Below, piece by piece: positions 947 through 56,574 of a stretch of 64,000 nt of DNA. This DNA comes from Macrostomum lignano (Eukaryota), in assembly GCA_002269645.1 (NCBI GenBank), contig NIVC01000897.1, positions 124,001-188,000 of the forward strand, written 5' to 3'. The notes beneath the pieces are model-generated. The model searched no databases. It was not told the DNA's origin and saw only the letters and a program-made list of their open reading frames with translations. A program made the translations under genes and the position numbers. How positions within the stretch are numbered: the first letter of the stretch is position 1; each line of letters starts with the position of its first letter.

Positions 947-1056
947 CTGGAATGGTTCGGGTGCAGGTGCTGCTTATTGTTGCTAGGCTTCACTTGCGTA
1001 ATGGTGGAGAGAGATCGCAAAGAGAGTAGGAATGGAATGAACTGAGGAGAGAGTCA

Positions 1057-1640
1057 GGATGACAGTAGGAGCGGAGGAGATTCTGAGGAGGGCAGTAGGG
1101 AGCGGAGGAGATTCTGAGGATAACAGTAGGGAGCGGAGGAGATTCTGAGGAGGACAGTTGGGAGCGGAGGAGATTCTGAGGATAACAGTAGGGAGCGGAG
1201 GAGATTCTGAGGAGGACAGTTGGGAGCGGAGGAGATTCTGAGGATAACAGTAAGGAGCGGAGGAGATTCTGAGGAGGACAGTAGGGAGCGGAGGAGATTC
1301 TGAGGAGGACAGTAGGGAGCGGAGGAGATTCTGAGGATAACAGTAAGGAGCGGAGGAGATTCTGAGGAGGACAGTAGGGAGCGGAGGAGATTCTGAGGAG
1401 GACAGTAGGGAGCGGAGGAGATTCTGAGGATGGCAGTAGGGAGCGGAGGAGATTCTGAGGATGGCAGTAGGGAGCGGAGGAGATTCTGAGGATGACAGTA
1501 GGGAGCGGAGGAGATTCTGAGGAGGACAGTAGGGAGCGGAGGAGATTCTGAGGATGGCAGTAGGGAGCGGAGGAGATTCCGAGGATGACAGTAGGGAGTG
1601 AAGAGAGGTTCAGGGATGAAAGAAGGGAGCGGAAGAGATT
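1057..1640. repeat. 31-bp purine-rich minisatellite (GGGAGCGGAGGAGATTCTGAGGAGGACAGTA), ~18 copies, in tensin intron 8
   Basis: TTCTGAGG recurs at 1081, 1112 and onward. Confidence 0.95.
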
Positions 1641-1917
1641 CTCGGGAGTAAGGGAGATGATGGATTATATGGCGGTGAGATGCAATAGATCAAAGCAAGC
1701 TGATAGTGAAGTAGGCAGCACTGGAACGAAATTAGTGTAGCAAGAATGTACTAGATAATGGATATGGAATGGATTCGATTTTAAAGCTCTTACAAACTAA
1801 CTAATTAGACTACGGGATAATCACTTAATCAGCTTTTCATATTATAACAAACAGGAGAATGAAATCCTCAGATAGAATTCTAACTGTTCTGAAAACTCAC
1901 TTTGATGCTTCACCTAC

Positions 1918-2673: not shown

Positions 2674-2731
2674 ACTCCAGTGCAATGTGGCACTCTATCA
2701 GGATTATTCAGTATTTAGCTACTCAACCTAC

Positions 2732-3160
2732 CAGCACTGCTCTGCAGCGGATGTCGGACCTCTACCGGAGCGCCTGCTGCGGTCTGTTCAACGCAGCCAC
2801 CAGCACCACCGGTTGCTTGCGCCTGCGCAGCAACTCTGTCAGGCTGGTCGTACACCGCAGCCTCCGGCCGGGGCACAATCAGGCGGCAAGGCAGGGCCAG
2901 CTGGGTGACCGAGTGCTGCTGCACCAAAGCGGCCAGTGTGGGGAAGATCGGCTCGTTGGCGCAGCCTTTGAGCCGCACGCCGCCCGAGGTTGGCTCGATG
3001 AGAAAATGCCGCACCAGTTCAGCGCCGATGTCGTTGGACTTTGGCTGGATGCCTTTGGGAATCTGCGCAACCCTCACGGCCAGGCCGAATGCGCCCGGGA
3101 AGCTGTTGGAGTCACGGACTACGAAAGTGCCCGGCTGGGCGTGCCGGAGCAGGTTGATAG
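2732..3160 (-). CDS. TNS: Tensin exon 7: SH2 domain body
   Basis: AINLLRHAQPGTFVVRDSNSFPGAFGLAVRV...ELVRHFLIEPTSGGVRLKGCANEPIFPTLAALVQQHSVTQLALPCRL. Acceptor ggtag|CT, donor G|gtaggt; 429 nt, phase 1-1. Confidence 0.95.
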
Positions 3161-3259
3161 CTACCGGTTGTTCGGGGCATTGTGAGCGGGTGATGGCAGT
3201 ACTTTCGGAAACAAAAATCGGCAGATAAAACAGCAATAGAAACTTTGATAGAAGCTTAC

Positions 3260-3684
3260 CTTCCTCCCGAGAGATGCGCGGTCGGTACCACAGCTTCATG
3301 CTGTCCTTCACCGACATCTGGGCAGCCGCGGCAGACACGTAGCCCACGTTCGGCGAGTCCAAAGCGTCCACGCTGCCGTTGAGGCTGGACGGATGGGAGA
3401 AGTTGCTGGATGACTGCTCGCCCGGAGACAGCGGCCCAGACGGGAAGGCCGGCGGCTGTTGCTGCTGCGATTGCTGGTGCTGCTGCGATGTAATTTGAAC
3501 CACGGAAGATACCGTTGAGACTGGGGATAGCAGAACTGGCTCCTGCGATTGGCTGTTCAGAAACTGCTGCGGCTGCTGCTGAGTCTGGTACTGCTGACTG
3601 CGGTGCTGCTCTGAGTAGTAGCCAGTGAATCCGTTGCCTCCAGTGTCTAAGACGTCGCGGGTCTGTTGCACCTGCTGCTGCTGC

Positions 3685-3717
<33 letters not shown>

Positions 3718-4222
3718 CTGCTGTAGCCCCTGTTGCTGGCCACGGTGCCAGTAGCTGACGCTGAGGCCGGCGCTCGGACAACCTCAACAGTGTGCGGCTG
3801 CTGCAGTTCGATTGCTATTGGCTGCGGCTGCTGCTGCTGTGCTCCACCGCTAGCTGAATGATCCGCCTGCCGACTGAGGCTGTGGGTCTCGTACCGTCGG
3901 GTCGTCTGCTGTTGATGCTGCTGCTGCTGCTGAGGGCTTTGAACGGCAGCTGCTGGCAGTGGCAGAGACGTCGGCGATTGAATTGTCGGATCGCCAAAGT
4001 CAGGCGGTACAGAGGACGAGTGGATGATTCTGCCGCCGCCACCGCCGGCTCCAGACATGTGAGTGAACTGTTGCTGCTGGACACCCACCTGGTGAATCTG
4101 CTGTCCCCTAGTGAGCGAATGCTGCTGATACTGCTGCGGCTGCAGGTGCACTTGGGCTGTTGTTGCCATAGCAACGCCGCCTGCCGATTGCGGCTGCGGA
4201 GTTGATGACCGCAGCGTAGCAA
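3260..4222 (-). CDS. TNS: Tensin exon 6: Q/S/P-rich linker and SH2 start (KLWYRPRISREE)
   Basis: Open frame. Acceptor ttttcag|TT, donor G|gtaagc; 963 nt, phase 1-1. Confidence 0.9.
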
Positions 4223-6654: not shown

Positions 6655-7410
6655 CTAAACTATTGTACTTGGAACACAAAGAAGATGTCCAGTTTATTCA
6701 GATAATAAAGAGCTTCTAAACTACTTGGAACACAAAGAAGATGTCCAGTTTATTCAGATAATAAAGAGCTTCTAAACTACTTGGAACACAAAGAAGATGT
6801 CCAGTTTATTGAGGTAATAAATAGCTTCTAAACTACTTGGAACACAAAGATGTCCAGTTTATTGAGATAATAAAGAGATTTCTAAACTACTTGGAACACA
6901 AAGATGTCCAGTTTATTGAGATAATAAAGAGATTTCTAAACTACTTGGAACACAAAGATGTCCAGTTTATTGAGATAATAAAGAGATTTCTAAACTACTT
7001 GGAACACAAAGATGTCCAGTTTATTGAGGTAATAAAGAGCTTCTAAACTACTTGGAACACAAAGATGACCAGTTTATTGAGGTAATAAAGAGCTTCTAAA
7101 CTACTTGGAACACAAAGATGTCCAGTTTATTGAGGTAATAAAGAGATTTCTAAACTACTTGGAACACAAAGATGTCCAGTTTATTGAGATAATAAAGAGA
7201 TTTCTAAACTACTTGGAACACAAAGATGTCCAGTTTATTGAGGTAATAAAGAGCTTCTAAACTACTTGGAACACAAAGATGTCCAGTTTATTGAGAGAAT
7301 AAAGAGATTTCTAAACTACTTGGAACACAAAGATGTCCAGTTTATTGAGATAAAAAAGAGCTTCTAAACTATTGTACTTGGAACACAAAGAAGATGTCCA
7401 GTTTATTGAG
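6655..7410. repeat. ~54-bp AT-rich minisatellite, ~14 copies, in tensin intron 3
   Basis: Unit AAACTACTTGGAACACAAAGATGTCCAGTTTATTGAGATAATAAAGAG(A/C)TTTCT; accounts for ORF 6837-7046. Confidence 0.95.
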
Positions 7411-12139: not shown

Positions 12140-12586
12140 CATCACAATTCAACCCTCAAGTTACGCAACCATAAGCAGCCGCGAGGAAAGGAAAGTTGAT
12201 CGAATCTAACGTCAGTCGCACAAAATCATAAGTTTAATTTTTTATGCAATATAAGCAGTTAGAATTGCGATGCTTAATAACGCGTGTGGGATCCCCTCGC
12301 ACGCAGAAGTGCGGCGACTCTGCCGGGCATCCTCAGGATGAGGCGGCGCAGAAAGTCCTGGAGAAGCTGCTGCCAAGCGTTTTCAATGGCATGACGCAGC
12401 TCCGCAACATTCTGTGGTGGATTCTCTTTTCGAATGCTGCGTTTTAGAAAGTCCCACGAGACATGCTCGATGGGATTCATGTCTGGGGACCGGGAAGGCC
12501 AGCGCAGAGTGCTCAGCTGTAGCTGGTCTTTTAGTTGGCTAACAGCATCGGCTCGGTGTGGTGGCGCGTTATTGTTATCCTGGTCA
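12140..12586 (-). mobile_element. Tc1/mariner transposase 3' remnant
   Basis: QDN..APPH...WPSRSPDMNPIEHVSWDFLKR...RMPGRVAALLRARGSHTRY* (ORF 12274-12594) is the typical Tc1 DD34E C-terminus. The N-terminus is missing. Confidence 0.85.
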
Positions 12587-12916
12587 ATATACACTCATCA
12601 ACATTGAAAACCGCCACTTTAGAGCATTGGCGGCAGAGCAATTGACTTCAACTCACACTGCAATGACGCAAGATTTTACAACCTCTCGCTCAGGCGCACT
12701 AGATCTAGGGTGGCGAAGCGACCATATACAATTCCTTGACTGGATACTGTCGGGCTAAGCGCATCACGACTGTACAATCGTAGTGTCTATGGTCAAAGTG
12801 GTCTGATCGCTGGGAACTCCTACATTCTGGTCAACGCCATATATATTCCATAGATGTGCTATAGTTGCTATAATGAATCTCATAAACAATCCCATGCTCA
12901 GGTAAGCACTGCTCAC

Positions 12917-15887: not shown

Positions 15888-15893
15888 TTTATT
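15888..15893 (-). terminator. Candidate polyadenylation signal (AATAAA) for the Kazal gene
   Basis: TTTATT on the plus strand, ~250 nt past the stop codon. Confidence 0.45.
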
Positions 15894-16141: not shown

Positions 16142-16684
16142 CTAGCAGAAGCCGCGATTAATAACTCTGGCGCCGAGGCAGGAGGCGATGCAAGAGTTCA
16201 GGTAGGTGTTGCGCGCGCTGCTACCGGAAGCGTAGGCGCACACGGGATCGTAGTTGCTGGGGCAGTTGCAGTTGCCGCCGGCATTGCGATTGTTATAGTT
16301 ATTGTAGTTGTACCTGTACTGGTTGTAGTTGCGGTAGTTGCTCCGGTAGTTGCGGTAGTAGTTCCGGTAGTTGCGGTAGTAGTTCCGGTAGTTGTACGGG
16401 TTCCGGTTGTTATAGATATTGTAGTTATAGCGACTGCGGCTCCAATAGTTTGGATAGCTGCCGCTTCTGGTGGCGCCGCTGGTTGTGCCGCAAAATCCGT
16501 AGGTAAAAGAGTTGTAGCCGTTGCACTGGGCGTAACAAGAATTTGCGTAGGTTTGGCCGTTGGCGCACACGGGCTGGTAGCCGGCGCTGGCGCACTGGCT
16601 GCAGGACACCTGGCCATTGGCGAGATGGCTGGCAGCGGCGGCTAGCAGGACCACAGCCAGAGAGAGTGCGGAGCTGGAGCGCAT
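16142..16684 (-). CDS. Secreted 180-aa protein: signal peptide, Kazal-like domain, Tyr/Asn/Arg-rich spacer, Kazal domain
   Basis: Intronless ORF from ATG 16684 to TAG 16142. Hydrophobic N-terminus MRSSSALSLAVVLLAAAASHLANG; two 6-Cys domains with the Y.PVC...TY.NSC motif. Confidence 0.9.
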   Translation of the reverse strand: MRSSSALSLAVVLLAAAASHLANGQVSCSQCASAGYQPVCANGQTYANSCYAQCNGYNSFTYGFCGTTSGATRSGSYPNYWSRSRYNYNIYNNRNPYNYRNYYRNYRNYYRNYRSNYRNYNQYRYNYNNYNNRNAGGNCNCPSNYDPVCAYASGSSARNTYLNSCIASCLGARVINRGFC

Positions 16685-19600
16685 CTTCAAATCAGCAATT
16701 AACTACCGGGCAGACTACCTGCGAAATTACCTGTCCTGTGGCGATAACCTTATGGGCTGATTAACTGAGCTGATTAAATACCTCTGCATGGGTGGGGTGG
16801 GTGGCGCCGGTTCTGCCTGCGCGCAACGTGCCAATAATTGATTGGCTGGCTGATCTTAAAGTTAGTCGGTTGGTTTACATCATTGTACAGTGCCATTGTT
16901 ACTCTCACTACCCCCTCACTCTTATCTAATCTCATTCTCTGCCCCCCTTTTCTGACTAAACGAGAGCTTAGCCTGTGTTATGCGTAGCATCAAAGATAAA
17001 CGTTAATTGCCACTTTGCAATCGATGAAAACTTGTTTAAATCGGTTTTTACCAAATAGATAACAATATAGGACAGCGTGCACAAACAGCCTGACTGGATG
17101 ATTAATTATTGCTTGCTTAACTTTAAAAGTACACCAGGTAAGATTGAGCTACTCTCTAGCCAAACTAGTTAATGAAGACAAAGTCTTTTCGCCCCAGTGA
17201 GCTTTGGGGTTGGAATTTTATAATACCTAGTGTTGTATCGATTATTTAAAGACTTTCAAGGCATTATTAACGCTGATGCTCCTAATATTTTGCGTCGTGT
17301 CATACATAAAGTTAGCCTAATAGATAAAGTAGGGCGAGAGTTGTAAAATGTCTCTAACGTCAAATGATTTATAGGAAGGGAATTAGGGATGTCGATTCCC
17401 CAGGGAATTATCTTATCGGGGACCCCGGTGAAAAGAAAAAATAAGTTAAAACGGCGGATCACTTAGATTGTAAGTGGAATTTTTTAAACTTTGATTTAAG
17501 CTTTGTACTACATGTTCAAGGCGCAGGGGTAAAAATTTTAAACAATGTTTTTTTAAACTGTATTTGACAATGTGGCATCACGAAATCGTGCGCGCACCTT
17601 TATCGGAAAAGTGCATTTGTTGGAATGCATGCTAAACAGCTACGCTCGTGAGAGGATAATTAATGAATGAGACTGTTTTTATAATCGGAATTTTATTTCT
17701 TGCATATATATGTAAATCACCATTTTTTCCTTGTCTAATAGGGAGTATATGTATGACACCCCCCTATGCGTCAGTGCCTGACGCATGACGCAGCGCTGCG
17801 CCTGCGTCAAGCCGTCAACGCAGACCAACACAGCAGTCACTAGTCAGTAAGGCTTCTTTTTCCTGACGGGTTTCTTTTCTACGTGCAATTTGCTTGATTG
17901 AATGACTTATTAGTGAAAAAACAATCAAACGTGTGTTGTGTTTCAAATACATGTAATGCATTGAAATAAGCAATTATGCGGTAAAAGAGCATAGACAGAG
18001 TTTCAATCAGCTTTCTGTGAATCAGTTTCTTATTTTAATGGCAAAAATTAAGTTACAAATGCATTTTTTCATATTTTTTCTCCCCAGGGTCCCCGGTTAA
18101 ATTCCCCGGAGAGTATTCCCCGACAAGCTCCCCGGGGAGCACTCCCGGGGTCAACATCCCTAGAAGGGAAACTACGAGCATAAGTTCTGCAACACATATA
18201 CAAGTAGCTAAGCATTAATAGACGCACTGCACCGATAAAATGTAATGGAATTGCTCGAATCACCGACACCAAGACCCATAAAACTGGAGAAACTGGCAGG
18301 ATATAGTAGATACATGTAGGTCAGAATCAGAAGTGATCATGGGTGGGTGGGTCAAGTGATCATGGGTTCGACCTCGATTGTATTATTCCTTCTTAATCTT
18401 ATGCAATTAATTGTAAATTAGGTATGAAGTAACAGTAATTATCCTTGACCATGCTAGAGTAAAGACAAGTCAAAGTCAAGTTAATAAAAATAGACACACA
18501 GTGTAACAATAACAATGGTTTTTAGAGCCATTTTTCTTGTCTGTGTTTGTCTTTGTACATACATGTACATTTGGGAAGACTTATCTGGACCCAATCCCTT
18601 CTTATTCTACATGTACGCTGTTTTGGGTATGGGGGTTAGAGTTGGGCCGTCTGACACCCCCTCCCCCCCCCCTACCATAGTGGACTGGAGAGAAAGAAGC
18701 ACATGCTATCGCTATTGGCTAGCCTGTCGTTCTCTTTCTCTTTACCTTCTGTCTTGTGTAGCGTACACTATCCAATGCACAAGGCCCAACTTTCCACTAA
18801 AGGAAGGTTCATATAGTCCGCCCATGGGCTTCCTCTTGCTTTCGCGTACACTCAAGGCCACTCACTCTCAACACCAGCCACTAGAGGCTTGTTTTAAATA
18901 ATCGATCGATAATATTAAATGTACACTTGAAAGCTTGCTTTGGATCCTAGCAGAAGGGGGAGAAAGTGGCCAAGGCCACCACACCCCACAAGGCAGGCAG
19001 GCCGGCCCGAGTGCGATAACGAATGACAAAAAAATAGAAAAGTACAATTTACACATCAACTTTCAATACAATAAATACAATAATAGGTACGGTATTAATG
19101 ACAGTGTATTTTCGCACAAAGTAGCTACGTTCAAACCACCAGCACGTAAACAGCTAAAATTTCACTGTTTATGAAATTTTATAAAATTTAACACATCATT
19201 TTAGATATTGAAAACTTTTAAAGGAGGGTATTACTGTTGCATGTGATTATAAAATCGTGGTAGGTATAGCTGATGATGAAACTGGTGATTGGTATCTAGC
19301 TTTTTTGATAACTTAGCCGGTTAGACCCCGAAATAGCTATTGTAATTTGTAACGCTGGAGCCAAATACAAATACAATGGAGCAATTAGTTTCTCTCAAAT
19401 CTGTCTCTGCCAGTGCCAGTTTAGTCCATAGTAAGTAACCAAAGTAAAATACCCATTAGTGGTCCCGTTTCTAATGTTTATAAATATTAAGCTTCAGTTT
19501 ACTTTTGGCACAGTATGCAATTTTGAAAATTCACCCTAATAACGGTTTGCACCAGCAGGAAAGCAACTATTTTGTTGTTGGAAATCGGATTAAGCAGTCA

Positions 19601-20984
19601 AAAGAGTGTATTTCTATGAAAAAAGGTACTTTTTTTCCATTTTTTCAAATATTTAAACAGGTTTCGCTCTTTCAATAAAAAAATCATCGCAGTACCTTAA
19701 AGTACAGTTAGTTTGGAATTAGATGACGGCGTTGAATTGTTTCTTCCATATTCCAAAAATTATAATGAGCACTTTTCCTCAAATCAGTTTGAGATCATGA
19801 TTTTTAGTCTTTCGTCGATAACTTTCTGATTTCAAATGTTTAAGAATTGAAAACTTCCACACTTGTGTATCTTTGAATTGCGCATCAATTGGTGCATAGT
19901 ATGTATGCTTAACTATTAGCAGTATAGAAAAAAATGCAAAAAACTGTAAAAGTACATTTTCAATTTTTGCATTTTTTGCAACCAAAGTGCCAACTTTTTG
20001 ATACAATTGAAAAAAACAACCCAATAATGTTATGCATCTTAGTAAGGCGCACCTATAACCCTCGAACATTTTTAGCTCGAGTTTTAATGTGCATGAGGAA
20101 ATGCACTTTTGTAAAGACATAATCTTAAGACAAACATTTCAACTGAAGCCTGTTCCTTTTCTCCGCAGTGAATCCATACAAAACTATACTCGTTAAATAG
20201 ATCAGATTCTTCTCTTTAAAATGACACCTCACTTGTGAAATTCGCACTTGTAGTTTTGAAGTTACAGCAGTTTTTGTGAGATTTTTCTTGTCATTTTTTC
20301 GATGCACACGTCTCATATTATTATATTCGTCACAAGCCAGACCACCCAATGCGCTTCGCGCATTGGCTGGCTGTTTGTTCCTCATGCTCGGCACTTTGTG
20401 CCTCGCGCGTTCGCTCCGCTCACCCCACAAACCCAAGGACACGCGCTTCGCGCGTGTCCTTGGGTTTGTGGGTTTCGCGGAGCTCACTGGGAACTAGCTC
20501 ATTCTCCAGTGTAGCACACCTTCTCAGATTGGCTTTTTTAAATAGGTAATAAAGTTAGAAGTTATTATTGAATTGAAAATAGGCTTTATTAGGCATAATA
20601 TTTGCGGCAAGTTGTTTATGCCCAAAGCGTTTAATTATAATCAAGAGATAATGAAGAATTTTGTCCTACAGGTCTGCGATGACAAGTGAATGTCGAATAC
20701 TCCATGGCAGTTAACTATAATATTATTGATTTAATTTAAAGCTCCTTGTGCAATCAAATACATGTCAGAAATTGCCGGTTAGAGCTCTGATGCATGTACA
20801 CTGGCACTGAGTAGGATCATTTGTAATTTCCGGTTATGAGTCATTGTCTGGAAAATTGGTTATTATTTTGACAACTATTCATTACCTGTATAATTAATTG
20901 GTAAATATTCAGACAATGGGTTATTGTTAGGACAGCTATTGTCAGGATAAAATTGGTCAGCAGAATTAAGGGCGGCATATTGGT

Positions 20985-21690
20985 CATCTATAGTCAGGGG
21001 TTTCATTGGTCATCTATGTCAGGGGTGTCATTGGTCATCTATGTCAGGGGTGTCATTGGTCATCTATAGTCAGGGGTTTCATTGGTCAGCTATAGTCAGG
21101 GGTGTCATTGGTCATCTATAGTCAGGGGTGTCATTGGTTATCTATAGTCAGTGTTGGCATTGGTCAGCTATAGTCAGGAGTGTCATTGGTCATTTATAGT
21201 CAGGGGTGTCATTGTTCATCTATGTCAGGGGTGTCATTGGTCATCTATGTCAGGGGTGTCATTGGTCATCTATGTCAGGGGTGTCATTGGTCATCTATAG
21301 TCAGGGGTTTCATTGGTCAGCTATAGTCAGGGGTGTCATTGGTCATCTATAGTCAGGGGTGTCATTGGTTATCTATAGTCAGTGTTGGCATTGGTCAGCT
21401 ATAGTCAGGAGTGTCATTGGTCATTTATAGTCAGGGGTGTCATTGTTCATCTATAGTCAGTGTTGGCATTGGTCATCTATAGTCAGGGGTGTCATTGGTC
21501 ATCTATAGTCAAGGGTTTCATTGGTCATTTATAGTCAGGGGTGTCATTAGTCATCTATGTCAGGGGTGTCATTGGTCATCTATATCAGGGGTGTCATTGG
21601 CCATCTATAGTCAGGGGTGTCATTGGTCATCTATGTCAGGGGTTTCATTGGTCGGTCATTTATAGTCAGGGGTGTCATTGGTCAGCTATA
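20985..21690. repeat. 25-26-bp minisatellite (TCATTGGTCATCTATAGTCAGGGGTG), ~27 copies
   Basis: Tandem units directly visible; intergenic. Confidence 0.95.
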
Positions 21691-22274
21691 GTCAGCTTTC
21701 CGATACAACACGATCCTATTTCAGATCAGACCGATTGCATGCAAGTATCGCATCATTTCAAAGGATCTGATATTCTATTGTTATTTAATAATTCAAAAGT
21801 AAAAAAAAGGTTTTGCATCTTGAAGTTAGAATGACAAATTCAATGAGTTTCAAATAAATTTTCGACAAAATTACGTAATATTTCGTATGGCACTTAAGCC
21901 TCAAATTACAGCTCACACCTGTCTGGAAAAGAGTAATTTGTTGTGCGTTTCATATGCCTATAATTACTGCTTGAGCAATAAGCTGCTTCTCGCAACAGTT
22001 CTCAGCCAGATCAATCCAGTGCTCCCTTGGCGCACACAGTCCACAGTGCACTGTATTGTTTGCAGTAGCATGCTATAGCGGCTCCGATTCAAAGTGGAAC
22101 GTACCGCTAAAAACCTATTCTTTAGGGCTGCTTAGTGCAGACTTTACAGAATATAAATAATATTAATTGTTTTGAAGATATTGGCTATGTAGAATGTTTT
22201 TCTTATTCTCGTGTATTACTATGAAATTTGCATGTAACAAGCCATGGATAACTAAAGTACATTTATTTGTAGGA

Positions 22275-28748: not shown

Positions 28749-28904
28749 CTGCATTGCGAAACAATATTGGGTTCCCGTTGATTGAAAACTGCTGCAAATG
28801 CGCATATTTCTACTTATAGTAGCTGGTCAGAGAATTGAAAATGTGCGTCAATACTATTTAACATTAGTAATATACTCGGATATCAACATCGCTAATTGTT
28901 CATG

Positions 28905-29685
28905 ACACAGGTGACACTTTCTGTGCGCTTGTCCTGAAAACAGGTGACACTTTCTGTGCGCTTGTCCTGAAAACAGGTGACACTTTCTGTGCGCTTGTCC
29001 TGAAAACAGGTGACACTTTCTGTGCGCTTTATCTGAAAACAGGTGACACTTTCTGTGCGCTTATTCTGAAAACAGGTGACACTTTCTGTGCGCTTATTCT
29101 GAAAACAGGTGACACTTTCTGTGCGCTTGTCCTGAAAACAGGTGACACTTTCTGTGCGCTTGTCCTGAAAACAGGTGACACTTTCTGTGCGCTTGTCCTG
29201 AAAACAGGTGACACTTTCTGTGCGCTTATTCTGAAAACAGGTGACACTTTCTGTGCGCTTGTCCTGAAAACAGGTGACACTTTCTGTGCGCTTATTCTGA
29301 AAACAGGTGACACTTTCTGTGCGCTTATTCTGAAAACAGGTGACACTTTCTGTGCGCTTGTCCTGAAAACAGATGACACTCTGCACGCCTGTCCCGAGAA
29401 CAGATGACACTTTCTGCACGCCTGTCCCGGGAACAGATGACACTTTCTGCACGCCTGTCCCGGGAACAGATGACACTTTCTGCACGCCTGTCCCGGGAAC
29501 TGATGACACTTTCTGCACGCCTGTCCCGGGAACAGATGACACTTTCTGCACGCTTGTCCCGGGAACAGATGACACTTTCTGCACGCCTGTCCCGGGAACA
29601 GATGACACTTTCTGCACGCTTGTCCCGGGAACAGATGACACTTTCTGCACGCCTGTCCCGGGAACAGATGACACTTTCTCTGCAT
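28905..29685. repeat. 33-bp minisatellite with two sub-arrays, ~23 copies, DMXL intron 12
   Basis: AAAACAGGTGACACTTTCTGTGCGCTTGTCCTG followed by GAACAGATGACACTTTCTGCACGCCTGTCCCGG. Confidence 0.95.
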
Positions 29686-29767
29686 GCATACCAAATCGCG
29701 TAAAATATCGCGTATTTAATCTACCCAACGATCCTATTAGGCAGAAAAGCGCATTCCCAGAGCTAAC

Positions 29768-30316
29768 CTGAAAAGCGTGCCTAACGGCCGCCTTGCGCAG
29801 GTCGAGCAGGGCCACGCCGCCTTTGGCTGTGCCGGCTAGCAACAGTTGGCGCTGCGGCGCGTAGGCCAGCGAAGTGCAACCGGCCTGCAGAGCCGGATCG
29901 AAGAAGCGCTGCACAACGGACTTCTCAACTGGGAGCAGAGTGTCCCAGAGGGCCGCGTTCGCCTCCGATTCGGCACCCGTGCCGCCAGTGGCGTACAGAG
30001 TTGAACAGCCGGCGAATAGCAGGTCGGAACAGCCGCGCGAGTGCCCGCGCCACACCCTGTAAGGCTTGTCCGACTCAGCGCCGCCGCCACCGCCGGCGCC
30101 CACAATGCTGCGCCAGTGCCACAGGGACACGTAGCCTTCGCTGTCGCCAACGGCGAATCGATTGCCGTAAACGTTGAAACGCAGGGCGGTGACTCGGCCG
30201 CCTACGCTGATACTGCCCGGCTTGGTTAGCGGGGCCCGGTGCGACCATTCGTAGCAGTCGATGGCGCCGGAGGCCGAGCCGAATAGGTAGTTGTGTCTGT
30301 CAGGGTGGGCCGCCAC
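29768..30316 (-). CDS. DMXL: DMXL exon 12 (C-terminal WD40 repeats)
   Basis: VAAHPDRHNYLFGSASGAIDCYEW...FNVYGNRFAVGDSEGYVSLW...ALWDTLLP...RHAFQ. ttccag| and |gttagc boundaries; 549 nt, phase 0-0. Confidence 0.95.
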
Positions 30317-30348
30317 CTGGAATGCGGGATAACTAGTGAGTATTAGTG

Positions 30349-32349
30349 CCAGTAGGCTGCTCAATGGGATAACCAGTAGGCTGCTCAATGGGATAACCAG
30401 TAGGCTGCTCAATGGGATAACCAGTAGGCTGCTCAATGGGATAACCAGTAGGCTGCTCAATGGGATAACCAGTAGGCTGCTCAATGGGATAACCAGTAGG
30501 CTGCTCAATGGGATAAACAGTAGGCTGCTCAATGGGATAACCAGTAGGCTGCTCAATGGGATAACCAGTAGGCTGCTCAATGGGATAAACAGTAGGCTGC
30601 TCAATGGGATAACCAGTAGGCTGCTCAATGGGATAACCAGTAGGCTGCTCAATGGGATAACCAGTAGGCTGCTCAATGGGATAACCAGTAGGCTGCTCAA
30701 TGGGATAACCAGTAGGCTGCTCAATGGGATAACCATTAGGCTGCTCAATGGGATAACCAGTAGGCTGCTCAATGGGATAACCAGTAGGCTGCTCAATGGG
30801 ATAACCAGTAGGCTGCTCAATGGGATAACCAGTAGGCTGCTCAATGGGATAACCAGTAGGCTGCTCAATGGGATAACCAGTAGGCTGCTCAATGGGATAA
30901 CCAGTAGGCTGCTCAATGGGATAACCAGTAGGCTGCTCAATGGGATAAACAGTAGGCTGCTCAATGGGATAACCAGTAGGCTGCTCAATGGGATAACCAG
31001 TAGGCTGCTCAATGGGATAAACAGTAGGCTGCTCAATGGGATAACCAGTAGGCTGCTCAATGGGATAACCAGTAGGCTGCTCAATGGGATAACCAGTAGG
31101 CTGCTCAATGGGATAACCAGTAGGCTGCTCAATGGGATAACCAGTAGGCTGCTCAATGGGATAACCATTAGGCTGCTCAATGGGATAACCAGTAGGCTGC
31201 TCAATGGGATAACCAGTAGGCTGCTCAATGGGATAACCAGTAGGCTGCTCAATGGGATAACCAGTAGGCTGCTCAATGGGATAACCAGTAGGCTGCTCAA
31301 TGGGATAACCAGTAGGCTGCTCAATGGGATAACCAGTAGGCTGCTCAATGGGATAACCAGTAGGCTGCTCAATGGGATAACCAGTAGGCTGCTCAATGGG
31401 ATAACCAGTAAGACAGCTCAATGGGATAATCAGTAAGACTGCTCAATGGGATAATCAGTGAGACTGCTCAATGGGATATTTAGTAACGCTGCTCAATGGC
31501 ACAAACAGTAGGCTGCTCAATGGGATAATCAGTAGGCTGCTCAATGGGATAATTAGTAAGACTGCTCAATGGGATAATCAGTAGGCTGCTCAATGGGATA
31601 ATTAGTAAGGCTGCTCAATGGGATAATCAGTAAGACTGCTCAATGGGATAATCAGTAAGACTGCTCAATGGGATAATCAGTAGGCTGCTCAATGGGATAA
31701 TTAGTAAGGCTGCTCAATGGGATAATCAGTAAGACTGCTCAATGGGATAATCAGTAAGACTGCTCAATGGGATAATCAGTAAGACTGCTCAATGGGATAA
31801 TCAGTAAGACTGCTCAATAGGACAAACAGTAGGCTGCTCAATGGGATAATCAGTAGGCTGCTCAATGGGATAATTAGTAAAGCTGCTCAATGGGATAATT
31901 AGTAAGGCTGCTCAATGGGATAATCAGTAGGCTGCTCAATGGGATAATCAGTGAGGCTGCTCAATGGGATAATCAGTAGGCTGCTCAATGGGATAATTAG
32001 TAAGGCTGCTCAATGGGATAATTAGTAAGGCTGCTCAATGGGATAATCAGTAGGCTGCTCAATGGGATAATCAGTGAGGCTGCTCAATGGGATAATCAGT
32101 AGGCTGCTCAATGGGATAATCAGTGAGGCTGCTCAATGGGATAATCAGTAGGCTGCTCAATGGGATAATTAGTAAGGCTGCTCAATGGGATAATCAGTAG
32201 GCTACTCAATGGGATAATCAGTAGGCTGCTCAATGGGATAATTAGTAAGGCTGCTCAATGGGATAATCAGTAGGCTGCTCAATGGGATAATTAGTAAGGC
32301 TGCTCAATGGGATAATCAGTAGGCTGCTCAATGGGATAATCAGTAGGCT
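30349..32349. repeat. 24-bp minisatellite (ATAA(C/T)CAGTAGGCTGCTCAATGGG), ~83 copies, DMXL intron 11
   Basis: Homogeneous tandem array; source of the spurious SSLLVIPL / GYPIEQPT / SRLLNGIT ORFs. Confidence 0.97.
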
Positions 32350-36197: not shown

Positions 36198-36260
36198 AGT
36201 TGACATTCCACTTTTGTATTTAGTACCAGTAATAAAATTCCTAGGCATTAAGCTACGCAC

Positions 36261-38042
36261 CATAAGCATAGACAGCGGCGTCCCTCAGCGCGCCCAGCTG
36301 CTGCTGCTGAGCTCCCTGACTCAAAGCATCGGTCCTTTGTCCAGCCAGCCGGCTCATCAAGCAGTAATAATCGCCGTACACTAAGCTAGTAGTGAATCCG
36401 GCAGCGGCCGCGGCGTCACCAGGCGGCCCGACACTGTCTACTAGGCACTGATAGACGCAGGCGGATACGGCAGCACTGATGCTGCGCAGCAGGAACAGTT
36501 CCTGGGCGTTGGCTGGCAGCTCAGGCGGAGACGCCCATCGGCGCAGCTGGCCGAGCACGTCGCCAATGAGATTCTGCAGCTGACGGATGGGATCGGCTAC
36601 TACAGTTTTGAAGCTGCTAACAGCCGCATTGATTAGCGGCAAACTGTTCGGCAGAGGCATTTTAGCTTCTAATTGAAGCGGCGCATCGGTCAGATTGTCC
36701 TGCAGCAGTTCCTGAAGGAGCAGCACCAGCTCCATGCGCACTGAGGTCAGGCCGCCGCCGCTGGCGCCGTGCAGAGAGCAGAAGCTTAGCAGAGTTCGCA
36801 ACAGCTGTTCATTGTCGCGCAGCCACAGCTTCCTACGCTGCCAAGAGTCCAAACGGCTGTGCAATGAGCCCCCTAAGTCAACTAGGCTGGCCTTGCGACC
36901 GCCGTAACCGGGTGCAGCGGCTGCCGAGGCGACAGTCGTTATCGTGGCGGCGGAATCTTCCTCTTCACCGGGAGTGCAGCCGTAGTGACACAGTCGCCTC
37001 AGCAGTGCGGTCTCCCGCTCCAGCCAGGCGTACAGCTGGGCCCGCAGCTGGCCGCCGTCGACTTCAAAGCCCGTAGCCAAGGTGCTCAGCTCCTCGGACA
37101 TAATCCGCTGGCAGGCCACGAATCGCAGCTGGTGAGTCATTACGTCCAGCACAGCCGGAGAATCTTTTAATGCAACCACTTCGCCAGTCGGCGCGTCATC
37201 AACCGGTGCTTCACCGTTTTCGAGGGCACCAGCTTCCTTTTTATCAATCGTCGCCTCATCGTCGTCAATATCCTCGTCGCTGCTGCTGCTCAGTCGAAGC
37301 GACGGCGGCCTGTCGTCGTCGGCGTCAGCCGCCGTTCCGATGTCGTTCCAGCACAGGAAGTTGTCTTCCTCTTTGGCCGGCGGCGGTGGCGGAGGCGGCG
37401 GCTGCTCCGCCTGCTGCTGTTCACCGTCGGCCGCCTTGCCAGCCGGAGTCTCCAGTCGCAGATAGTCGGGCAGGCGGGTCAGAACCTCAAGCGCCAGACT
37501 GGGGCAGCCCAAACGGAAATAGGCGTGTGCGGTGCGGAAGAACAGCCGGCGCTCTGTTAGGCTCATCCGCTCACCCGACGCTGACGATGCGGCTGTCGGC
37601 ACCGCCGCAGTTGCACCGCCGCCACCCATGCCAACTGGTAGGCCGCCGCGCAGTTTAGCCTGGCGCAGTATCAACGGATGGCATTTCAAATAATTGAAGT
37701 AGTTGAACACGCTCGGACTGGACTGGTCAAGCAGGGCGGAGTCCGGCTCGCCCAGCAGCAGAGTGCTGACTGCTTGGTCATAGTCTTTCAATAGCCAGTG
37801 CGCCATGCTGCGGTAGAACGGATTAGAATAATACCGGCCAGTCGGGCTGAGCACGTACTTATTGAGTAAGTCGGCGAGCGGCTGGTTGCTATTGGATACC
37901 AGTACGCCTTCGGCTGCGTGCAGCCTAGCCAGCACTATGGCCAGCTGCAGATCGTTCAGTTTGGTGACGCAAACTTCCACTGCATCTTTAACGCTGTTGC
38001 CAAGCAGAAAGAAGGCGGCTGCGTGCTCAAATCGTTGCTTAC
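36261..38042 (-). CDS. DMXL: DMXL exon 9 (Rav1p_C-region continuation)
   Basis: GKQRFEHAAAFFLLGNSVKDAVEVCVTKLNDLQLAIVLARL...PFYRSMAHWLLKDY...ELSTLATGFEVDGGQLRAQLYAWLERE. cgcag|GT and G|gtgcgt; 1782 nt, phase 1-1. Confidence 0.95.
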
Positions 38043-38137
38043 CTGCGAGCGGGGAGTCGCATCAGTGAGTTAGGCGAATTTTTGTAACAGAATGAATCCC
38101 ATTATTTCCCGTATTACATCTCAATCCTATTACACCA

Positions 38138-38220
38138 GAATTATATCACATCTGAATTATATCACACCTGAATTATATCACACTGAATTATATCACACCT
38201 GAATTATATCACACCTAAAT
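38138..38220. repeat. 16-bp tandem repeat (GAATTATATCACACCT), ~5 copies, DMXL intron 8
   Basis: Tandem units directly visible. Confidence 0.9.
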
Positions 38221-38339
38221 TCTATTCGATGGGCATATGATAGCACCCGAATACAAACGGATACTATTATAAACTAAATCCATCTGCATTTTGAAATCCA
38301 TCAGCATCCCAATCAAGCCAGCAGCCTCAGCTCACTCAC

Positions 38340-38826
38340 CCAGCAGGTCAAAGGCATTCTTCAGAGCCGCTGTGCGCCAACGCTCCTGACTGAAGTCTTG
38401 CCGAAAGAAGTCCTGCAGCTTCTGATTGCTGACAGTTTTGTACAGGGCGGCTATCACTTTGACTCGTCGCATTGCCAGATAGAATACGGCAGCGTCTAGC
38501 GGCTCCTGTTTAGACTGAAAAGCCGCCTTAGCGGCCCGTTCAGCGCATCGGCGCAGCAGGGAATCGTTGCGCACCCACCAGCCGCAGCCGTACTGCTTCA
38601 TCACTGACCAAGCTAGGTCGCCAGACTCCGTGACAGGCAACCGGCTGAGCAGCTCCTCCTGAGCCTCGCTGTGAAATGCCCAGACTAAATTGCCAGCGGC
38701 GATGCCATTCTGTGCTAGCTCGGCCCGCTGGCTAGGCGGCAAAGTGCGCAACAGGTAGGTGTGATGCTGCAGTACAACAAAGAATCTGAGACCGCACGCG
38801 TCTAGGGAGTCGGTGAGGCCGCGCAC
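38340..38826 (-). CDS. DMXL: DMXL exon 8 (Rav1p_C domain)
   Basis: DSLDACGLRFF...VWAFHSEAQEELL...GCGWWVRN...EPLDAAVFYLAMRR...FFRQDFSQERWRTAALKNAFDLL. cttag|GTG and G|gtgagt. Confidence 0.96.
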
Positions 38827-38938
38827 CTAAGCGAGGTTAGTAGGTTGGATGATAATAAAGGTTATTAAGAGGGCGGACACATAAATGAGGCTTGTAAACG
38901 AAAAAATTGCTGTACAATTTAGGCTTGACGATGGGGGG

Positions 38939-39251
38939 GGGGGTCCGTAGCCCAGTGGCCAAGCGCGGCGCTCTCATGTGCCAGCGGCCCAGGCTCGATT
39001 CCAAGTGCAGTTACATTAATTTGGGGCTAAATTGGAATCTCGGCTTGGCTCTGCTCGTGCAATTAACGGCCTTGAGGGCCAACCCCCAAGGCACAGTGTG
39101 TATGCCTAACGATAAATAAAGTTAGGGCCGCTGTACACTCCCGTGAGTGTGTGCCTGCTCAGGGGAGTCGGCAGAATGGCAGTAATGCCTCTCGCCGGTT
39201 GTGACAATCTTGCTTAAAGTGCGCCAGGGTGCACACTGCCCCTGCCTTTAA
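38939..39251 (+). mobile_element. SINE family B, full length, DMXL intron 7
   Basis: GGGGTCCGTAGCCCAGTGG (A box) ... GGCTCGATTCC (B box); matches the copies at 5012 and 11703. Confidence 0.88.
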
Positions 39252-39321
39252 CTAGGCCTGACGATAAGAACTCGGGGTCGCTGTACACCCTGTGCAAGAT
39301 TGTGCCTGCGTGCGGTGCGTG

Positions 39322-39545
39322 CTCAGGGGTTATCGGAATGGGCCTGAGTTCTTGCTTCCTCGCTGCCTTGATTTGCACTCAGGGGTTTTCGGAATGGGCC
39401 TGAGTTCTTGCTTCCTCGCTGCCTTGATTTGCACTCAGGGGTTTTCGGAATGGGCCTGAGTTCTTGCTTCCTCGCTGCCTTGATTTGCACTCAGGGGTTA
39501 TCGGAATGGGCCTGAGTTCTTGCTTCCTCGCTGCCTTGATTTGCG
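39322..39545. repeat. 56-bp tandem repeat x4, derived from a SINE-like 3' segment
   Basis: CTCAGGGGTT(A/T)TCGGAATGGGCCTGAGTTCTTGCTTCCTCGCTGCCTTGATTTGCA starts at 39322, 39378 and onward. Confidence 0.9.
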
Positions 39546-39681
39546 ACGGAGCCCAGAAAGACTCGTCGCAAGCTATAATAAACCAGCTTAAAATCCTCTC
39601 ACTCCGCAAATTAGAGCAGCCTTTAATTTGCAAGTTCCCACAGTAGCACTATGGCAGCAGAGTTCAAAGCCAGCTGCTCAC

Positions 39682-40224
39682 CGAGCCCTCAGTGCTGGTG
39701 TAGCCTCGCACGCTGCCATCGTCTAGTGAGGCCAGACGCGCTCCAGTCTTCGGCTGCCAGTCGGAGCCCAGGCCGGTCTGCAGGTTGGCAACCACTTCAG
39801 CCAAAGCTAGCAGGTACATCTGGTCTAGGCGGCTCAGGCCGGGCAGCTGGATCTGCATCAGGTGCTCAGTAAGCAGCTTGGCGGTAGCTGGGCCGAAAGC
39901 CGTTCGATTGCCGCCCTGCTGCTGGTGAACAGTGGAAGTCACCCGACGCTGAGTCCGAGGAGACTTCGGTGAGTCGCCGTCGCCAGCCTCGAGCTCGTCG
40001 TCTTCTTCCGCCTCGAGCAGGTTGTGCGAGTAGGTATCCGGCAGAGAGGTCTCGTCGCCGAACGCGTTATCAAACAGATCGTTGGCACCGCCATTCAGCA
40101 GGCCGCCGGAAGCGTCGGCGCCAGCGCCAGATTGAGAGCCAGTGCCGGCACCGGCGACGCTGTCATTGTCGGCTTCGAACAAGGCGTACAGCGGCAGCGG
40201 CGGGACGGCTTTGATGTCAAGCAC
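39682..40224 (-). CDS. DMXL: DMXL exon 7
   Basis: VLDIKAVPPLPLYALFEAD...FGPATAKLLTEHLMQIQLPGLSRLDQMYLLALAEVVA. actcag|GTG and TCG|gtgagc; 543 nt. Confidence 0.93.
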
Positions 40225-40369
40225 CTGAGTTAGGTAAAATGACGCGTGCTGGAGAAGTGGACGGGTTATTTTGTTGTAATTGCTTGCTAATAACTGTACA
40301 GTATAGTTACCGACACTAAACGACAAGACAGTCGACACATTAAGCAACCACATAACCGACAAATTAAAT

Positions 40370-40600: not shown

Positions 40601-40641
40601 ACATTAAACGACAATTGGTGCAAATAACGAAAAAAACTTAC

Positions 40642-56493: not shown

Positions 56494-56574
56494 CTGTGGA
56501 AGATTTGTTTGAATAGTTGCATGGAGTTTTCTGGATATAGGAACAAACAAGTGCTGTCTAAAGTGCTTTAATAG

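What the first reader, a model, noticed from the sequence alone, without database searches (positions are those of the whole stretch)
16142..16684. Secreted Kazal-(Tyr/Asn/Arg)n-Kazal protein with an unusual architecture
Seen: an intronless 180-aa ORF with a signal peptide. Domain 1 is atypical Kazal (C-x2-C-x8-C-x9-C-x3-C-x10-C); domain 2 is more canonical (C-x1-C-x7-C-x15-C-x3-C-x10-C, P1 Ser). Between them (16283-16456) is a 58-aa spacer with 19 Tyr, 20 Asn, 11 Arg and no acidic residue, built of NYR/NYYR units. Known: Tyr-rich secreted proteins are DOPA/quinone-crosslinked in flatworm eggshells and mussel adhesives, and Tyr/Arg pairs drive cation-pi coacervation. Inference: a protease-shielded structural, adhesive or eggshell component, or a cationic antimicrobial or mucus protein. 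I know no named family with this layout.
Basis: partly seen in the sequence, partly recalled or inferred. Interest (0 to 1): 0.75.

Follow-up and report, generated by a model that had tools for sequence, protein, structure and literature searches.

The report
Flatworm Kazal–Tyr/Asn/Arg–Kazal secreted protein
A small gene of the flatworm Macrostomum lignano encodes a secreted protein with two protease-inhibitor (Kazal) domains joined by a very unusual sticky, positively charged tyrosine/asparagine/arginine repeat; the layout is real and apparently unique, but where it is expressed and what it does remain unknown.

Summary
A 180-aa intronless ORF lies on the minus strand (ATG 16684, stop 16142-16144). 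It has a signal-peptide-like N-terminus and two six-Cys domains. Between them is a 58-aa spacer with 20 Asn, 19 Tyr, 11 Arg and no acidic residue.

The window is Macrostomum lignano contig NIVC01000897.1. The gene is already deposited as an uncharacterised protein (Mlig029904.g1/g3, Mlig030744.g1) in a purely transcript-derived annotation, so it is transcribed.

Both domains are genuine non-classical Kazal domains:
- each scores about 43 bits against a subfamily profile;
- domain 1 matches leech-derived tryptase inhibitor (LDTI) at E = 4e-5;
- an AF2 model of domain 2 has pLDDT 95 and TM 0.79 to LDTI.

The linker grew by in-frame tandem duplication (a 21-nt array flanked by older 27-nt units). 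It has no counterpart in 1.84 billion representative proteins, in 458 linkers of the closest multi-Kazal relatives, or in the searched literature. Changes between copies and units are mostly synonymous.

No tissue or expression data could be retrieved. My best reading, at moderate confidence, is a double-headed serine-protease inhibitor anchored in a secreted matrix by a cationic, aromatic, possibly cross-linkable tether. Eggshell or adhesive precursor, seminal-fluid protein and neutral repeat expansion remain open. It is a new variant of a known kind, of moderate interest.

The parts
16841..16845 (-). CCAAT box, 161 nt upstream of the ATG
   Evidence: Sequence motif, conserved in all three genomic copies. 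Its function is inferred.
16774..16780 (-). TATA-like box TATTTAA, 96 nt upstream of the ATG
   Evidence: Identical in L001, L002 and L003. Its function is inferred.
16142..16684 (-). Complete intronless CDS, 180 aa plus stop (Mlig029904 gene)
   Evidence: The CDS is 100% identical to contig NIVC01000897.1. The gene model comes from a transcript-derived annotation.
16613..16684 (-). Predicted signal peptide, aa 1-24 (MRSSSALSLAVVLLAAAASHLANG | Q)
   Evidence: Positive n-region, hydrophobic core, and -3/-1 Ala/Gly. The cleavage site is inferred; an alternative site follows Ser19.
16490..16603 (-). Kazal domain 1 (Cys28-Cys65), C-x2-C-x8-C-x9-C-x3-C-x10-C; predicted P1 is Ser33 (16586-16588)
   Evidence: Pfam Kazal_2 at 20.7 bits. 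LDTI at E=3.6e-5, plus SPI-1 and rhodniin. 43.8 bits against the subfamily HMM.
16457..16489 (-). Short Gly/Ser/Thr-rich connector, aa 66-76 (GTTSGATRSGS)
   Evidence: Read directly from the sequence.
16283..16456 (-). Asn/Tyr/Arg low-complexity linker, aa 77-134; net charge about +11, GRAVY -2.58
   Evidence: It has no Pfam or HMM match. It is an outlier among 458 linkers of relatives.
16325..16394 (-). Young 21-nt tandem array (3.3 copies, 95% match) encoding NYYRNYR units; one unit is missing from the deposited 173-aa product
   Evidence: TRF. Alignment of the 173-aa and 180-aa forms.
16145..16270 (-). Kazal domain 2 (Cys139-Cys180), C-x1-C-x7-C-x15-C-x3-C-x10-C; predicted P1 is Ser143 (16256-16258); the protein ends at the last Cys
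   Evidence: 42.6 bits against the subfamily HMM. AF2 pLDDT 95.3. Foldseek gives LDTI at TM 0.79 and silk protease inhibitor 2 at TM 0.72-0.77.
15888..15893 (-). AATAAA poly(A) signal, 249 nt after the stop
   Evidence: Conserved in all three copies. Its function is inferred.

Best explanation
This is a real, transcribed, lineage-restricted gene of Macrostomum lignano. It encodes a secreted, strongly cationic protein of about 18 kDa. Shown: two non-classical (LDTI/rhodniin-type) Kazal domains are joined by a 58-aa Asn/Tyr/Arg low-complexity linker. The linker arose by in-frame tandem duplication. The reading frame and composition look conserved. Inferred mechanism: each Kazal head presents a canonical reactive-site loop with P1 = Ser. 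A small polar P1 argues against trypsin-like targets and for proteases with small S1 pockets, meaning elastase-like enzymes or microbial subtilisin/proteinase-K-like enzymes. The linker has no Lys, no acidic residue and no N-glycosylation sequon, with Tyr and Arg every 2-4 residues. I infer that it is disordered and acts as a sticky tether. It would bind polyanionic or aromatic-rich secreted material (mucus or rhabdite glycosaminoglycans, glue, egg coverings) through charge, cation-pi and pi-pi contacts. It may also become covalently fixed through its tyrosines. The net effect would be a protease inhibitor concentrated and retained inside an extracellular secretion, protecting that secretion from degradation.
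For: Gene reality:
- The window is identical to the Mlig_3_7 contig.
- Three near-identical copies are all annotated.
- The annotation was built only from RNA-seq and transcript assemblies, with novel transcripts required to reach RPKM >= 0.5 (PMC5730564).
- TATA-like, CCAAT and AATAAA signals are conserved in all three copies.

Kazal identity:
- Exhaustive phmmer gives 450 hits, all through the two Cys-rich halves.
- Domain 1 matches LDTI at E=3.6e-5.
- Both domains score about 43 bits against a subfamily HMM built without them.
- The profile hits 78 PDB chains, and all 60 listed are Kazal or follistatin-type.
- The domain 2 model has pLDDT 95.3 and TM 0.79 to LDTI and 0.72-0.77 to Galleria silk protease inhibitor 2.

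Linker:
- Composition and charge are as described.
- It contains a 21-nt array, and the older 27-nt units are 23/27 identical.
- 7 of 10 changes between copies and units are synonymous, against 21% expected (P about 0.001, crude), and pN/pS is about 0.18.
- There are no sequons despite 31 Asn (P = 0.006 to 0.03).

Precedents:
- The closest structural matches include a Kazal inhibitor deposited as a silk protease inhibitor; that it protects the silk from microbial proteases is from my own knowledge.
- Kazal inhibitors are found in mollusc shell matrices.
- In this same species, adhesion depends on cationic Lys/Arg-rich protein regions binding polyanions (PMC6410801).
Against: - No tissue, cell-type or proteomic localisation was found, so 'matrix-anchored' is an inference from composition alone.
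- P1 = Ser is rare among relatives (3 of 104). It may mean weak inhibition or none.
- Domain 1 has one extra residue in the reactive-site loop, so its P1 assignment is uncertain.
- Pfam scores fall just below the gathering thresholds.
- The genome is full of minisatellites and the array varies in copy number (173 vs 180 aa), so the linker could be a tolerated expansion.
- The selection test rests on only 10 substitutions among very recent duplicates.
- No orthologue outside M. lignano was available to test long-term conservation.
Confidence: 0.4

Rival explanations
1. The protein is a structural precursor, and the Tyr-rich linker is the functional part. It would be stored in granules (oocyte eggshell granules, cement glands or adhesive glands). 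After release it would be hardened by tyrosinase- or peroxidase-driven DOPA/quinone or dityrosine cross-linking, or it would coacervate through Tyr-Arg contacts. The Kazal domains would serve as stable disulfide-knotted end caps and as protection against proteolysis.
For: - The linker is 33% Tyr with Arg every 3-4 residues, highly hydrophilic, and lacks glycosylation sequons.
- M. lignano oocytes deposit eggshell granules (PMC4490696).
- Basic Tyr-rich cross-linking proteins such as KRMP exist in mollusc shell.
- Tyr-rich quinone-tanned eggshell proteins are known in parasitic flatworms (established knowledge).
Against: - The gene ID is absent from the held parts of the ovary, tail and adhesion candidate lists. 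Those files were truncated or use other identifiers, so this is weak evidence.
- There is no sequence similarity to any known eggshell or adhesive protein.
- At 18 kDa with a single 58-aa sticky block it is small for a load-bearing matrix protein.
- It has no Lys, His or Gly, which accompany Tyr in known flatworm eggshell and mussel proteins.
Confidence: 0.2
2. The protein is an ordinary double-headed Kazal inhibitor, and its linker is a neutral or nearly neutral in-frame minisatellite expansion. The linker would be a long flexible spacer with no specific binding or material role.
For: - The linker core is a 21-nt array at 95% identity.
- Copy number differs between the transcript-derived product (173 aa) and the genome (180 aa).
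- The 64-kb window alone holds at least 20 minisatellite arrays.
- Tyr (TAC) and Asn (AAC) codons differ by one base, and a Y102N change separates the copies.
Against: - The composition extends well beyond the young array, into diverged units with different codons.
- 3 of the 4 differences between the old 27-nt units are synonymous.
- There are no stops, acidic residues or sequons across 58 residues.
- None of the 458 linkers in relatives resembles it.
Confidence: 0.2
3. The protein is a reproductive secretion, either a prostate seminal-fluid protein or a female antrum protein. The Kazal heads would regulate proteolysis in the mating partner, and the gene would be evolving fast under sexual selection.
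For: - It is small, secreted, intronless, lineage-restricted and repeat-bearing, without close homologues. Most prostate-limited transcripts of this species share these properties (PMC5977470).
- Kazal inhibitors are common in animal seminal fluids (established knowledge).
Against: Neither 'Kazal' nor the gene ID appears in the prostate screen's text or held supplements. This is weak evidence, because that study used older transcript identifiers. Nothing in the sequence points specifically to reproduction.
Confidence: 0.13
4. The protein is a cationic antimicrobial protein or a peptide precursor. The Arg/Tyr-rich segment would be released and would act on microbial membranes or cell walls.
For: Net charge is about +11 over 58 residues with abundant aromatics.
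Against: - There are no dibasic or furin-type processing sites.
- The segment is extremely hydrophilic (GRAVY -2.58) with no amphipathic hydrophobic face.
- It resembles no known antimicrobial peptide family.
Confidence: 0.05
5. It is not a real gene: a chance ORF or an annotation artefact.
For: The deposited product (173 aa) does not match the genomic ORF (180 aa).
Against: - Two significant Kazal domains lie in one frame on either side of the repeat.
- There is a signal peptide, and the promoter and poly(A) motifs are conserved.
- The annotation is transcript-based.
- Substitutions show a synonymous excess.
Confidence: 0.02

Closest known systems
Leech-derived tryptase inhibitor (LDTI) and other non-classical invertebrate Kazal inhibitors (MEROPS family I1; PDB 1ldt, 2kmo)
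   Same: Same short Cys1-Cys2 spacing, the same PVC...TY-x-N-x-C-x-A-x-C core and the same fold. Domain 1 matches at E=3.6e-5. The domain 2 model superposes at TM 0.79, about 40% identity.
   Different: LDTI is a single 46-aa domain with P1 Lys. Here there are two domains, both with P1 Ser, and a 58-aa low-complexity linker.
Rhodniin, dipetalin and infestin (double- or multi-headed Kazal inhibitors of blood-feeding bugs; PDB 1tbq, 1kma, 2erw)
   Same: Rhodniin has two non-classical Kazal domains in one secreted chain. The profile hits rhodniin at 2.7e-17.
   Different: Their inter-domain linkers are short, and rhodniin's is acidic and helps bind thrombin (established knowledge). Here the linker is long, basic, Tyr/Asn-rich and repetitive.
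Galleria mellonella silk protease inhibitor 2 (PDB 4hgu, 2m5x)
   Same: A small non-classical Kazal domain that is part of a secreted structural material (silk). It is a functional precedent for an inhibitor resident in a secretion. TM 0.72-0.77; profile E=1.9e-11.
   Different: It is a single domain with no sticky low-complexity segment. How it associates with silk is a separate question.
Basic Tyr-rich cross-linking matrix proteins (pearl-oyster KRMP; flatworm eggshell precursors; mussel foot proteins)
   Same: A secreted protein in which a cationic region is combined with a Tyr-rich region thought to polymerise by cross-linking. Tyr next to cationic residues, as in mussel adhesives (established knowledge).
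   Different: There is no sequence similarity. Those proteins use Gly, Lys, His or DOPA contexts, whereas this one has no Lys, no His in the mature part and no Gly in the repeat, and Asn is the spacer residue. None of them carries Kazal domains. In shell matrices the Kazal inhibitors are separate proteins.
M. lignano adhesive protein Mlig-ap1
   Same: Same species. It is secreted, and its extremely cationic Lys/Arg-rich repeats act by binding polyanions. It also carries a trypsin-inhibitor-like Cys-rich domain.
   Different: Mlig-ap1 is a giant multi-domain protein with more than 3,600 aa of KR regions, not Tyr-rich and without Kazal domains. The present gene is not in the held supplements of that study.

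Membership tests
Kazal-type serine protease inhibitor domain (Pfam PF00050/PF07648; MEROPS I1) | Six cysteines with Kazal spacing and the conserved P-V-C ... T-Y-x-N-x-C-x-x-x-C core | tested here: met
   Both domains have the six Cys, PVC, TY.N.C and C-x3-C. The alignment consensus is CxCxxxYxPVCxxxGxTYxNxCxAxC.
Kazal-type serine protease inhibitor domain (Pfam PF00050/PF07648; MEROPS I1) | Score above Pfam's curated gathering threshold | tested here: not met
   Whole protein: Kazal_2 20.4 bits against a cutoff of 22.8, Kazal_1 19.4 against 21. Per domain: 20.7 and 14.5 bits. The shortfall is small and is outweighed by the subfamily-profile and PDB results below.
Kazal-type serine protease inhibitor domain (Pfam PF00050/PF07648; MEROPS I1) | Significant sequence similarity to experimentally characterised Kazal inhibitors | tested here: met
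   Domain 1 matches LDTI at E=3.6e-5. A profile containing both domains hits 78 PDB chains, and all 60 listed are Kazal or follistatin-type. Both domains score about 43 bits against a subfamily HMM built without them.
Kazal-type serine protease inhibitor domain (Pfam PF00050/PF07648; MEROPS I1) | Kazal fold (beta-hairpin, short helix, C-terminal strand) | tested here: met
   Domain 2 only: AF2 pLDDT 95.3 with elements E-E-H-E; Foldseek top hits are LDTI, silk PI2 and OMTKY3.
Kazal-type serine protease inhibitor domain (Pfam PF00050/PF07648; MEROPS I1) | 1-5, 2-4, 3-6 disulfide connectivity and actual protease inhibition through the canonical loop | not testable with these tools
   This needs protein chemistry and enzyme assays. 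P1 is Ser in both domains, which is rare among relatives (3 of 104).
Double-headed Kazal inhibitors of the rhodniin type | Two Kazal domains joined by a short linker that participates in binding one target protease | tested here: not met
   Two domains are present, but the Cys-to-Cys gap is 73 aa and the linker is basic and repetitive. The median linker in relatives is 11 aa.
Flatworm eggshell precursor proteins (quinone-tanned, Tyr/DOPA-rich) | Tyr-rich secreted protein expressed in vitellocytes or oocytes and modified to DOPA | tested here: inconclusive
   Tyr-rich and secreted: yes. Sequence similarity to any such protein: none. Expression: no data found. DOPA modification is not testable here.
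Mussel-foot-protein-like adhesive or coacervating proteins | Tyr/DOPA adjacent to cationic residues (mostly Lys) in tandem repeats; coacervation | tested here: inconclusive
   18 of 19 linker Tyr are adjacent to Asn or Arg, and there are tandem repeats. However, there are zero Lys residues and no homology. Coacervation and DOPA are not testable here.
Prion-like / FUS-type low-complexity domains | Asn/Gln/Tyr/Gly/Ser-rich and depleted in charged residues | tested here: not met
   The linker is Asn- and Tyr-rich but 19% Arg, with net charge about +11. The protein is also extracellular.

The most novel reading that the evidence does not exclude
The protein would be a new type of extracellular material protein: a self-associating Tyr/Arg 'sticker' segment that phase-separates, alone or with polyanions, and can be cured through its tyrosines. 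It would be capped at both ends by built-in Kazal protease inhibitors, so that the condensate or matrix it forms protects itself against proteolysis. Such a fusion of material-forming and material-protecting functions in one small polypeptide has not been described.
Probability: 0.18. Interest if true: 0.7.

Novelty: new variant of a known kind. Interest (0 to 1): 0.4.

Why it matters
If the linker really anchors or polymerises the protein, this 18-kDa molecule would be a compact natural design that couples protease resistance to a sticky, cross-linkable, Lys-free Tyr/Arg segment. That would interest bioadhesion and biomaterials research, for which M. lignano is already a model. It would also interest people studying extracellular phase separation. 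It would further show how a genome rich in minisatellites can build a new functional module inside an old domain family by in-frame repeat expansion. If the linker is only a tolerated expansion, the gene is an ordinary lineage-specific double Kazal inhibitor. M. lignano has ISH, RNAi and transgenesis, so the question is cheap to settle.

Tried and rejected
1. Expression look-ups.
- 'Mlig029904' occurs in no paper text.
- The gene IDs are not in the held supplements of PMC7336406, PMC5816591, PMC5977470, PMC6410801 or PMC8662610. No supplements are held for PMC10786194.
- Several of these files were truncated or use older identifiers, so absence is not evidence of non-expression.

2. The repeat peptide printed in any paper: none relevant.

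3. 'Kazal' together with 'tyrosine-rich' in one paper: three papers, none describing a single protein with both features.

4. Linker-only search of 5.8 billion proteins: only 5 word-sharing candidates, none scoring. This is uninformative for low-complexity sequence.

5. Single-sequence AF2 of the whole protein: pLDDT 36.8, unusable.

6. Paralogues or a secretory gene cluster in the window: none. The neighbours are an SH2 gene, a Rav1p_C/WD40 gene, a transposase remnant and minisatellites.

7. Prohormone or peptide-precursor idea: rejected, because there are no dibasic or furin sites.

8. The overlapping 139-aa Thr/Ala-rich ORF in another frame (16198-16617): rejected as a by-product of the repeat. 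It has no signal peptide and no homology.

9. dN/dS between copies: only 1-6 differences, so it was usable only as a crude pooled test.

10. Organisms of the nearest single-domain relatives: environmental assemblies, a fungus and a protist, at 28-36 bits. No orthology can be inferred.

Full report
1. WHAT IS THERE

The reported interval holds a contiguous ORF on the minus strand (ATG 16684, stop 16142-16144) encoding 180 aa.
- Cys spacing is 2,8,9,3,10 for domain 1, then a 73-residue gap, then 1,7,15,3,10 for domain 2.
- The 58-residue segment at aa 77-134 (window 16283-16456) contains 20 Asn, 19 Tyr, 11 Arg, 3 Ser, 2 Pro and one each of Trp, Ile and Gln.
- That segment has no acidic residue.

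The N-terminus (MRSSSALSLAVVLLAAAASHLANG|Q) has a basic n-region, a hydrophobic core and small residues at -3/-1. This is a classical signal-peptide layout. The cleavage site is inferred, because SignalP was not available.

2. WHERE IT COMES FROM, AND WHETHER IT IS A REAL GENE

[quoted passage not shown] Window positions 6142-26684 are 100% identical to contig NIVC01000897.1 of assembly Mlig_3_7.

The gene exists in three nearly identical genomic copies: Mlig029904.g1, Mlig029904.g3 and Mlig030744.g1. This fits the known redundancy of the DV1 genome.

All three genomic copies encode 180 aa. The deposited product of two of them is nevertheless 173 aa, because the model skips one 21-nt unit. The GenBank annotation was built exclusively from RNA-seq (StringTie/TACO) and a de novo transcriptome, and novel transcripts were required to reach RPKM >= 0.5 (PMC5730564). 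The gene model is therefore transcript evidence in itself. The 21-nt gap most simply reflects a transcript with one repeat fewer, either a polymorphism or an assembly collapse.

Three signals are conserved in all three copies:
- a TATA-like box at -96;
- a CCAAT box at -161;
- an AATAAA 249 nt after the stop.

Between copies, and between the old internal repeat units, 7 of 10 substitutions are synonymous, against 21% expected (crude binomial P about 0.001). pN/pS is about 0.18 for the most diverged pair.

3. THE TWO CYS-RICH DOMAINS ARE KAZAL DOMAINS

Pfam scores fall just under the gathering thresholds. The other evidence is consistent:
- An exhaustive phmmer scan of 1.84 billion representatives gave 450 hits at E<=1e-3. 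In the 150 hits listed, the best-scoring stretch always fell in one of the two Cys-rich halves; one (P0107) also ran back into the C-terminal part of the linker. All sequences inspected were multi-Kazal proteins.
- Domain 1 matches leech-derived tryptase inhibitor at E=3.6e-5, and also SPI-1 and rhodniin.
- Against an HMM built from 400 Kazal segments of the hits, with the query excluded, domain 1 scores 43.8 bits, domain 2 scores 42.6 bits and the linker scores nothing.
- A profile containing both domains retrieves 78 PDB chains. All 60 listed are Kazal or follistatin-type: agrin, rhodniin, SPI-1, LDTI, Anemonia elastase inhibitor, silk protease inhibitor 2, infestin and ovomucoid.
- AF2 with that alignment folds domain 2 at pLDDT 95.3.
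- Foldseek places the model on LDTI (TM 0.79, probability 1.00), Galleria silk protease inhibitor 2 (TM 0.72-0.77) and OMTKY3.

Both domains belong to the short 'non-classical' invertebrate class. Domain 1, however, has the more typical Cys3-Cys4 loop.

By position (second residue after Cys2), P1 is Ser in both domains. This is rare among relatives (3 of 104). Domain 1 has one extra residue in the loop, so its P1 assignment is less certain.

4. THE LINKER

At the DNA level the core is a 21-nt tandem array of 3.3 copies at 95% identity, encoding NYYRNYR units. It is flanked by older, diverged units:
- two 27-nt units (YNYNIYNNR and YNYNNYNNR) that are 23/27 identical, with 3 of the 4 differences synonymous;
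- two 18-nt units.

The resulting Arg spacing is 9,6,4,3,4,3,4,6,9.

The segment is extremely hydrophilic (GRAVY -2.58), with net charge about +11. The mature protein (156 aa, 18 kDa, pI 9.3) contains no Lys, Glu, His or Met and has no dibasic processing sites. Despite 31 Asn, it has not a single N-x-S/T sequon. Shuffling gives P(0) = 0.006 globally and 0.03 segment-wise.

Among 458 inter-domain linkers in the 149 closest relatives:
- the median length is 11 aa;
- the highest Tyr fraction is 10%, against 33% here;
- the highest Y+N+R fraction is 34%, against 86% here.

No Pfam family, no PDB entry, no protein in the large collections and no paper in the searched library shows a Kazal-(N/Y/R)n-Kazal design.

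5. WHAT IT PROBABLY DOES

Shown: a transcribed, secreted, cationic, double-headed non-classical Kazal protein with a repeat-derived N/Y/R linker.

Inferred (confidence about 0.4): the heads are standard-mechanism inhibitors whose small polar P1 suits elastase-like or microbial subtilisin-like proteases rather than trypsin-like ones. This rests on established structure-activity knowledge of Kazal P1 variants and was not tested here. The linker would be a disordered, sticky, polycationic and aromatic tether. It would hold the inhibitor in a secreted polyanionic or aromatic-rich material and may be covalently fixed through Tyr.

Precedents:
- a Kazal inhibitor deposited as a silk protease inhibitor is among the closest structural matches; that it protects the silk is from my own knowledge;
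- Kazal inhibitors occur in mollusc shell matrix, alongside separate basic Tyr-rich cross-linkers;
- cationic-repeat/polyanion chemistry underlies adhesion in this very species.

Rivals:
- a structural eggshell, cement or adhesive precursor in which the linker is the functional part (0.2);
- a plain inhibitor with a neutral repeat expansion (0.2);
- a reproductive secretion (0.13);
- an antimicrobial precursor (0.05);
- an artefact (0.02).

The decisive missing datum is where the gene is expressed. I could not retrieve it. The gene IDs occur in no paper text and in none of the held, partly truncated supplements of six Macrostomum studies.

6. COMPARISON WITH WHAT IS KNOWN, AND NOVELTY

Membership of the Kazal family (MEROPS I1, non-classical subgroup) is met on motif, profile and fold. 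It is just missed on Pfam's cutoff. Inhibitory activity is untested.

It is not a rhodniin-type inhibitor, because the linker is long, basic and repetitive. It shares no homology with flatworm eggshell proteins, mussel foot proteins, KRMP or Mlig-ap1, and resembles them only in compositional logic. It fails the prion-like-domain definition because of its high charge.

The gene is already deposited as an uncharacterised 'Kazal-like domain-containing protein'. What is new is recognition of the architecture. I rate it a new variant of a known kind, with interest 0.4.

The most novel reading not excluded is a self-protecting, phase-separating or curable extracellular material protein with built-in inhibitor caps (probability about 0.18).

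7. LIMITS

- No SignalP run was possible.
- Domain 1 was not modelled.
- No orthologues were available. The nearest single-domain relatives, at 28-36 bits, come from environmental assemblies, a fungus and a protist.
- The selection test rests on ten substitutions among recent duplicates.
- All functional statements beyond domain identity are inference.

Noticed in passing
window 16325-16394; loci L001/L002 10001-10543: The GenBank products PAA63617 and PAA75186 are 173 aa, although both genomic loci encode 180 aa. The transcript-derived model skips one 21-nt NYYRNYR unit. This suggests either repeat-number polymorphism in the worm culture or a collapsed transcript assembly.
   Followed up: partly
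window 16283-16456 (-): Arg spacing in the linker is palindromic (9,6,4,3,4,3,4,6,9). The two outer 27-nt units are 23/27 identical, and 3 of their 4 differences are synonymous. The young, homogeneous units sit in the centre and the old, diverged ones at the edges.
   Followed up: partly
window 16145-16684 (-): The protein has 31 Asn but no N-x-S/T glycosylation sequon (shuffle P = 0.006 to 0.03). The mature protein also lacks Lys, Glu, His and Met entirely.
   Followed up: partly
window 16198-16617 (-): An overlapping 139-aa Thr/Ala/Gly-rich ORF lies in another frame of the same strand. I judge it a by-product of the repeat, not a gene.
   Followed up: partly
window 1056-1642, 6666-7410, 20979-21695, 28907-29683, 30349-32349, 41595-42399, 54090-54973, 56574-58033, 61951-64000 and others: The 64-kb window carries at least 20 minisatellite arrays (periods 16-107 nt, up to about 89 copies). 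Some of them create long spurious ORFs, for example 28892-31396.
   Followed up: no
window 12277-12594 (-): A C-terminal remnant of a Tc1/mariner-type DDE transposase (Pfam DDE_3, 32.5 bits).
   Followed up: no
window 2718-4169 (-); 36256-41466 (-); 52884-53801 (-): Neighbouring genes are ordinary intracellular ones: a Gln-rich SH2-domain protein, exons with Rav1p_C similarity (rabconnectin/DMXL-like), and WD40 repeats. There is no cluster of secreted proteins around the Kazal gene.
   Followed up: partly
L002 12528-14459 vs window 17163-19097: In the homeologous contig NIVC01001828.1, the region downstream of the gene contains an inverted copy of the sequence that lies upstream of the gene in the window. 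This is either a structural variant between homeologues or an assembly artefact.
   Followed up: no
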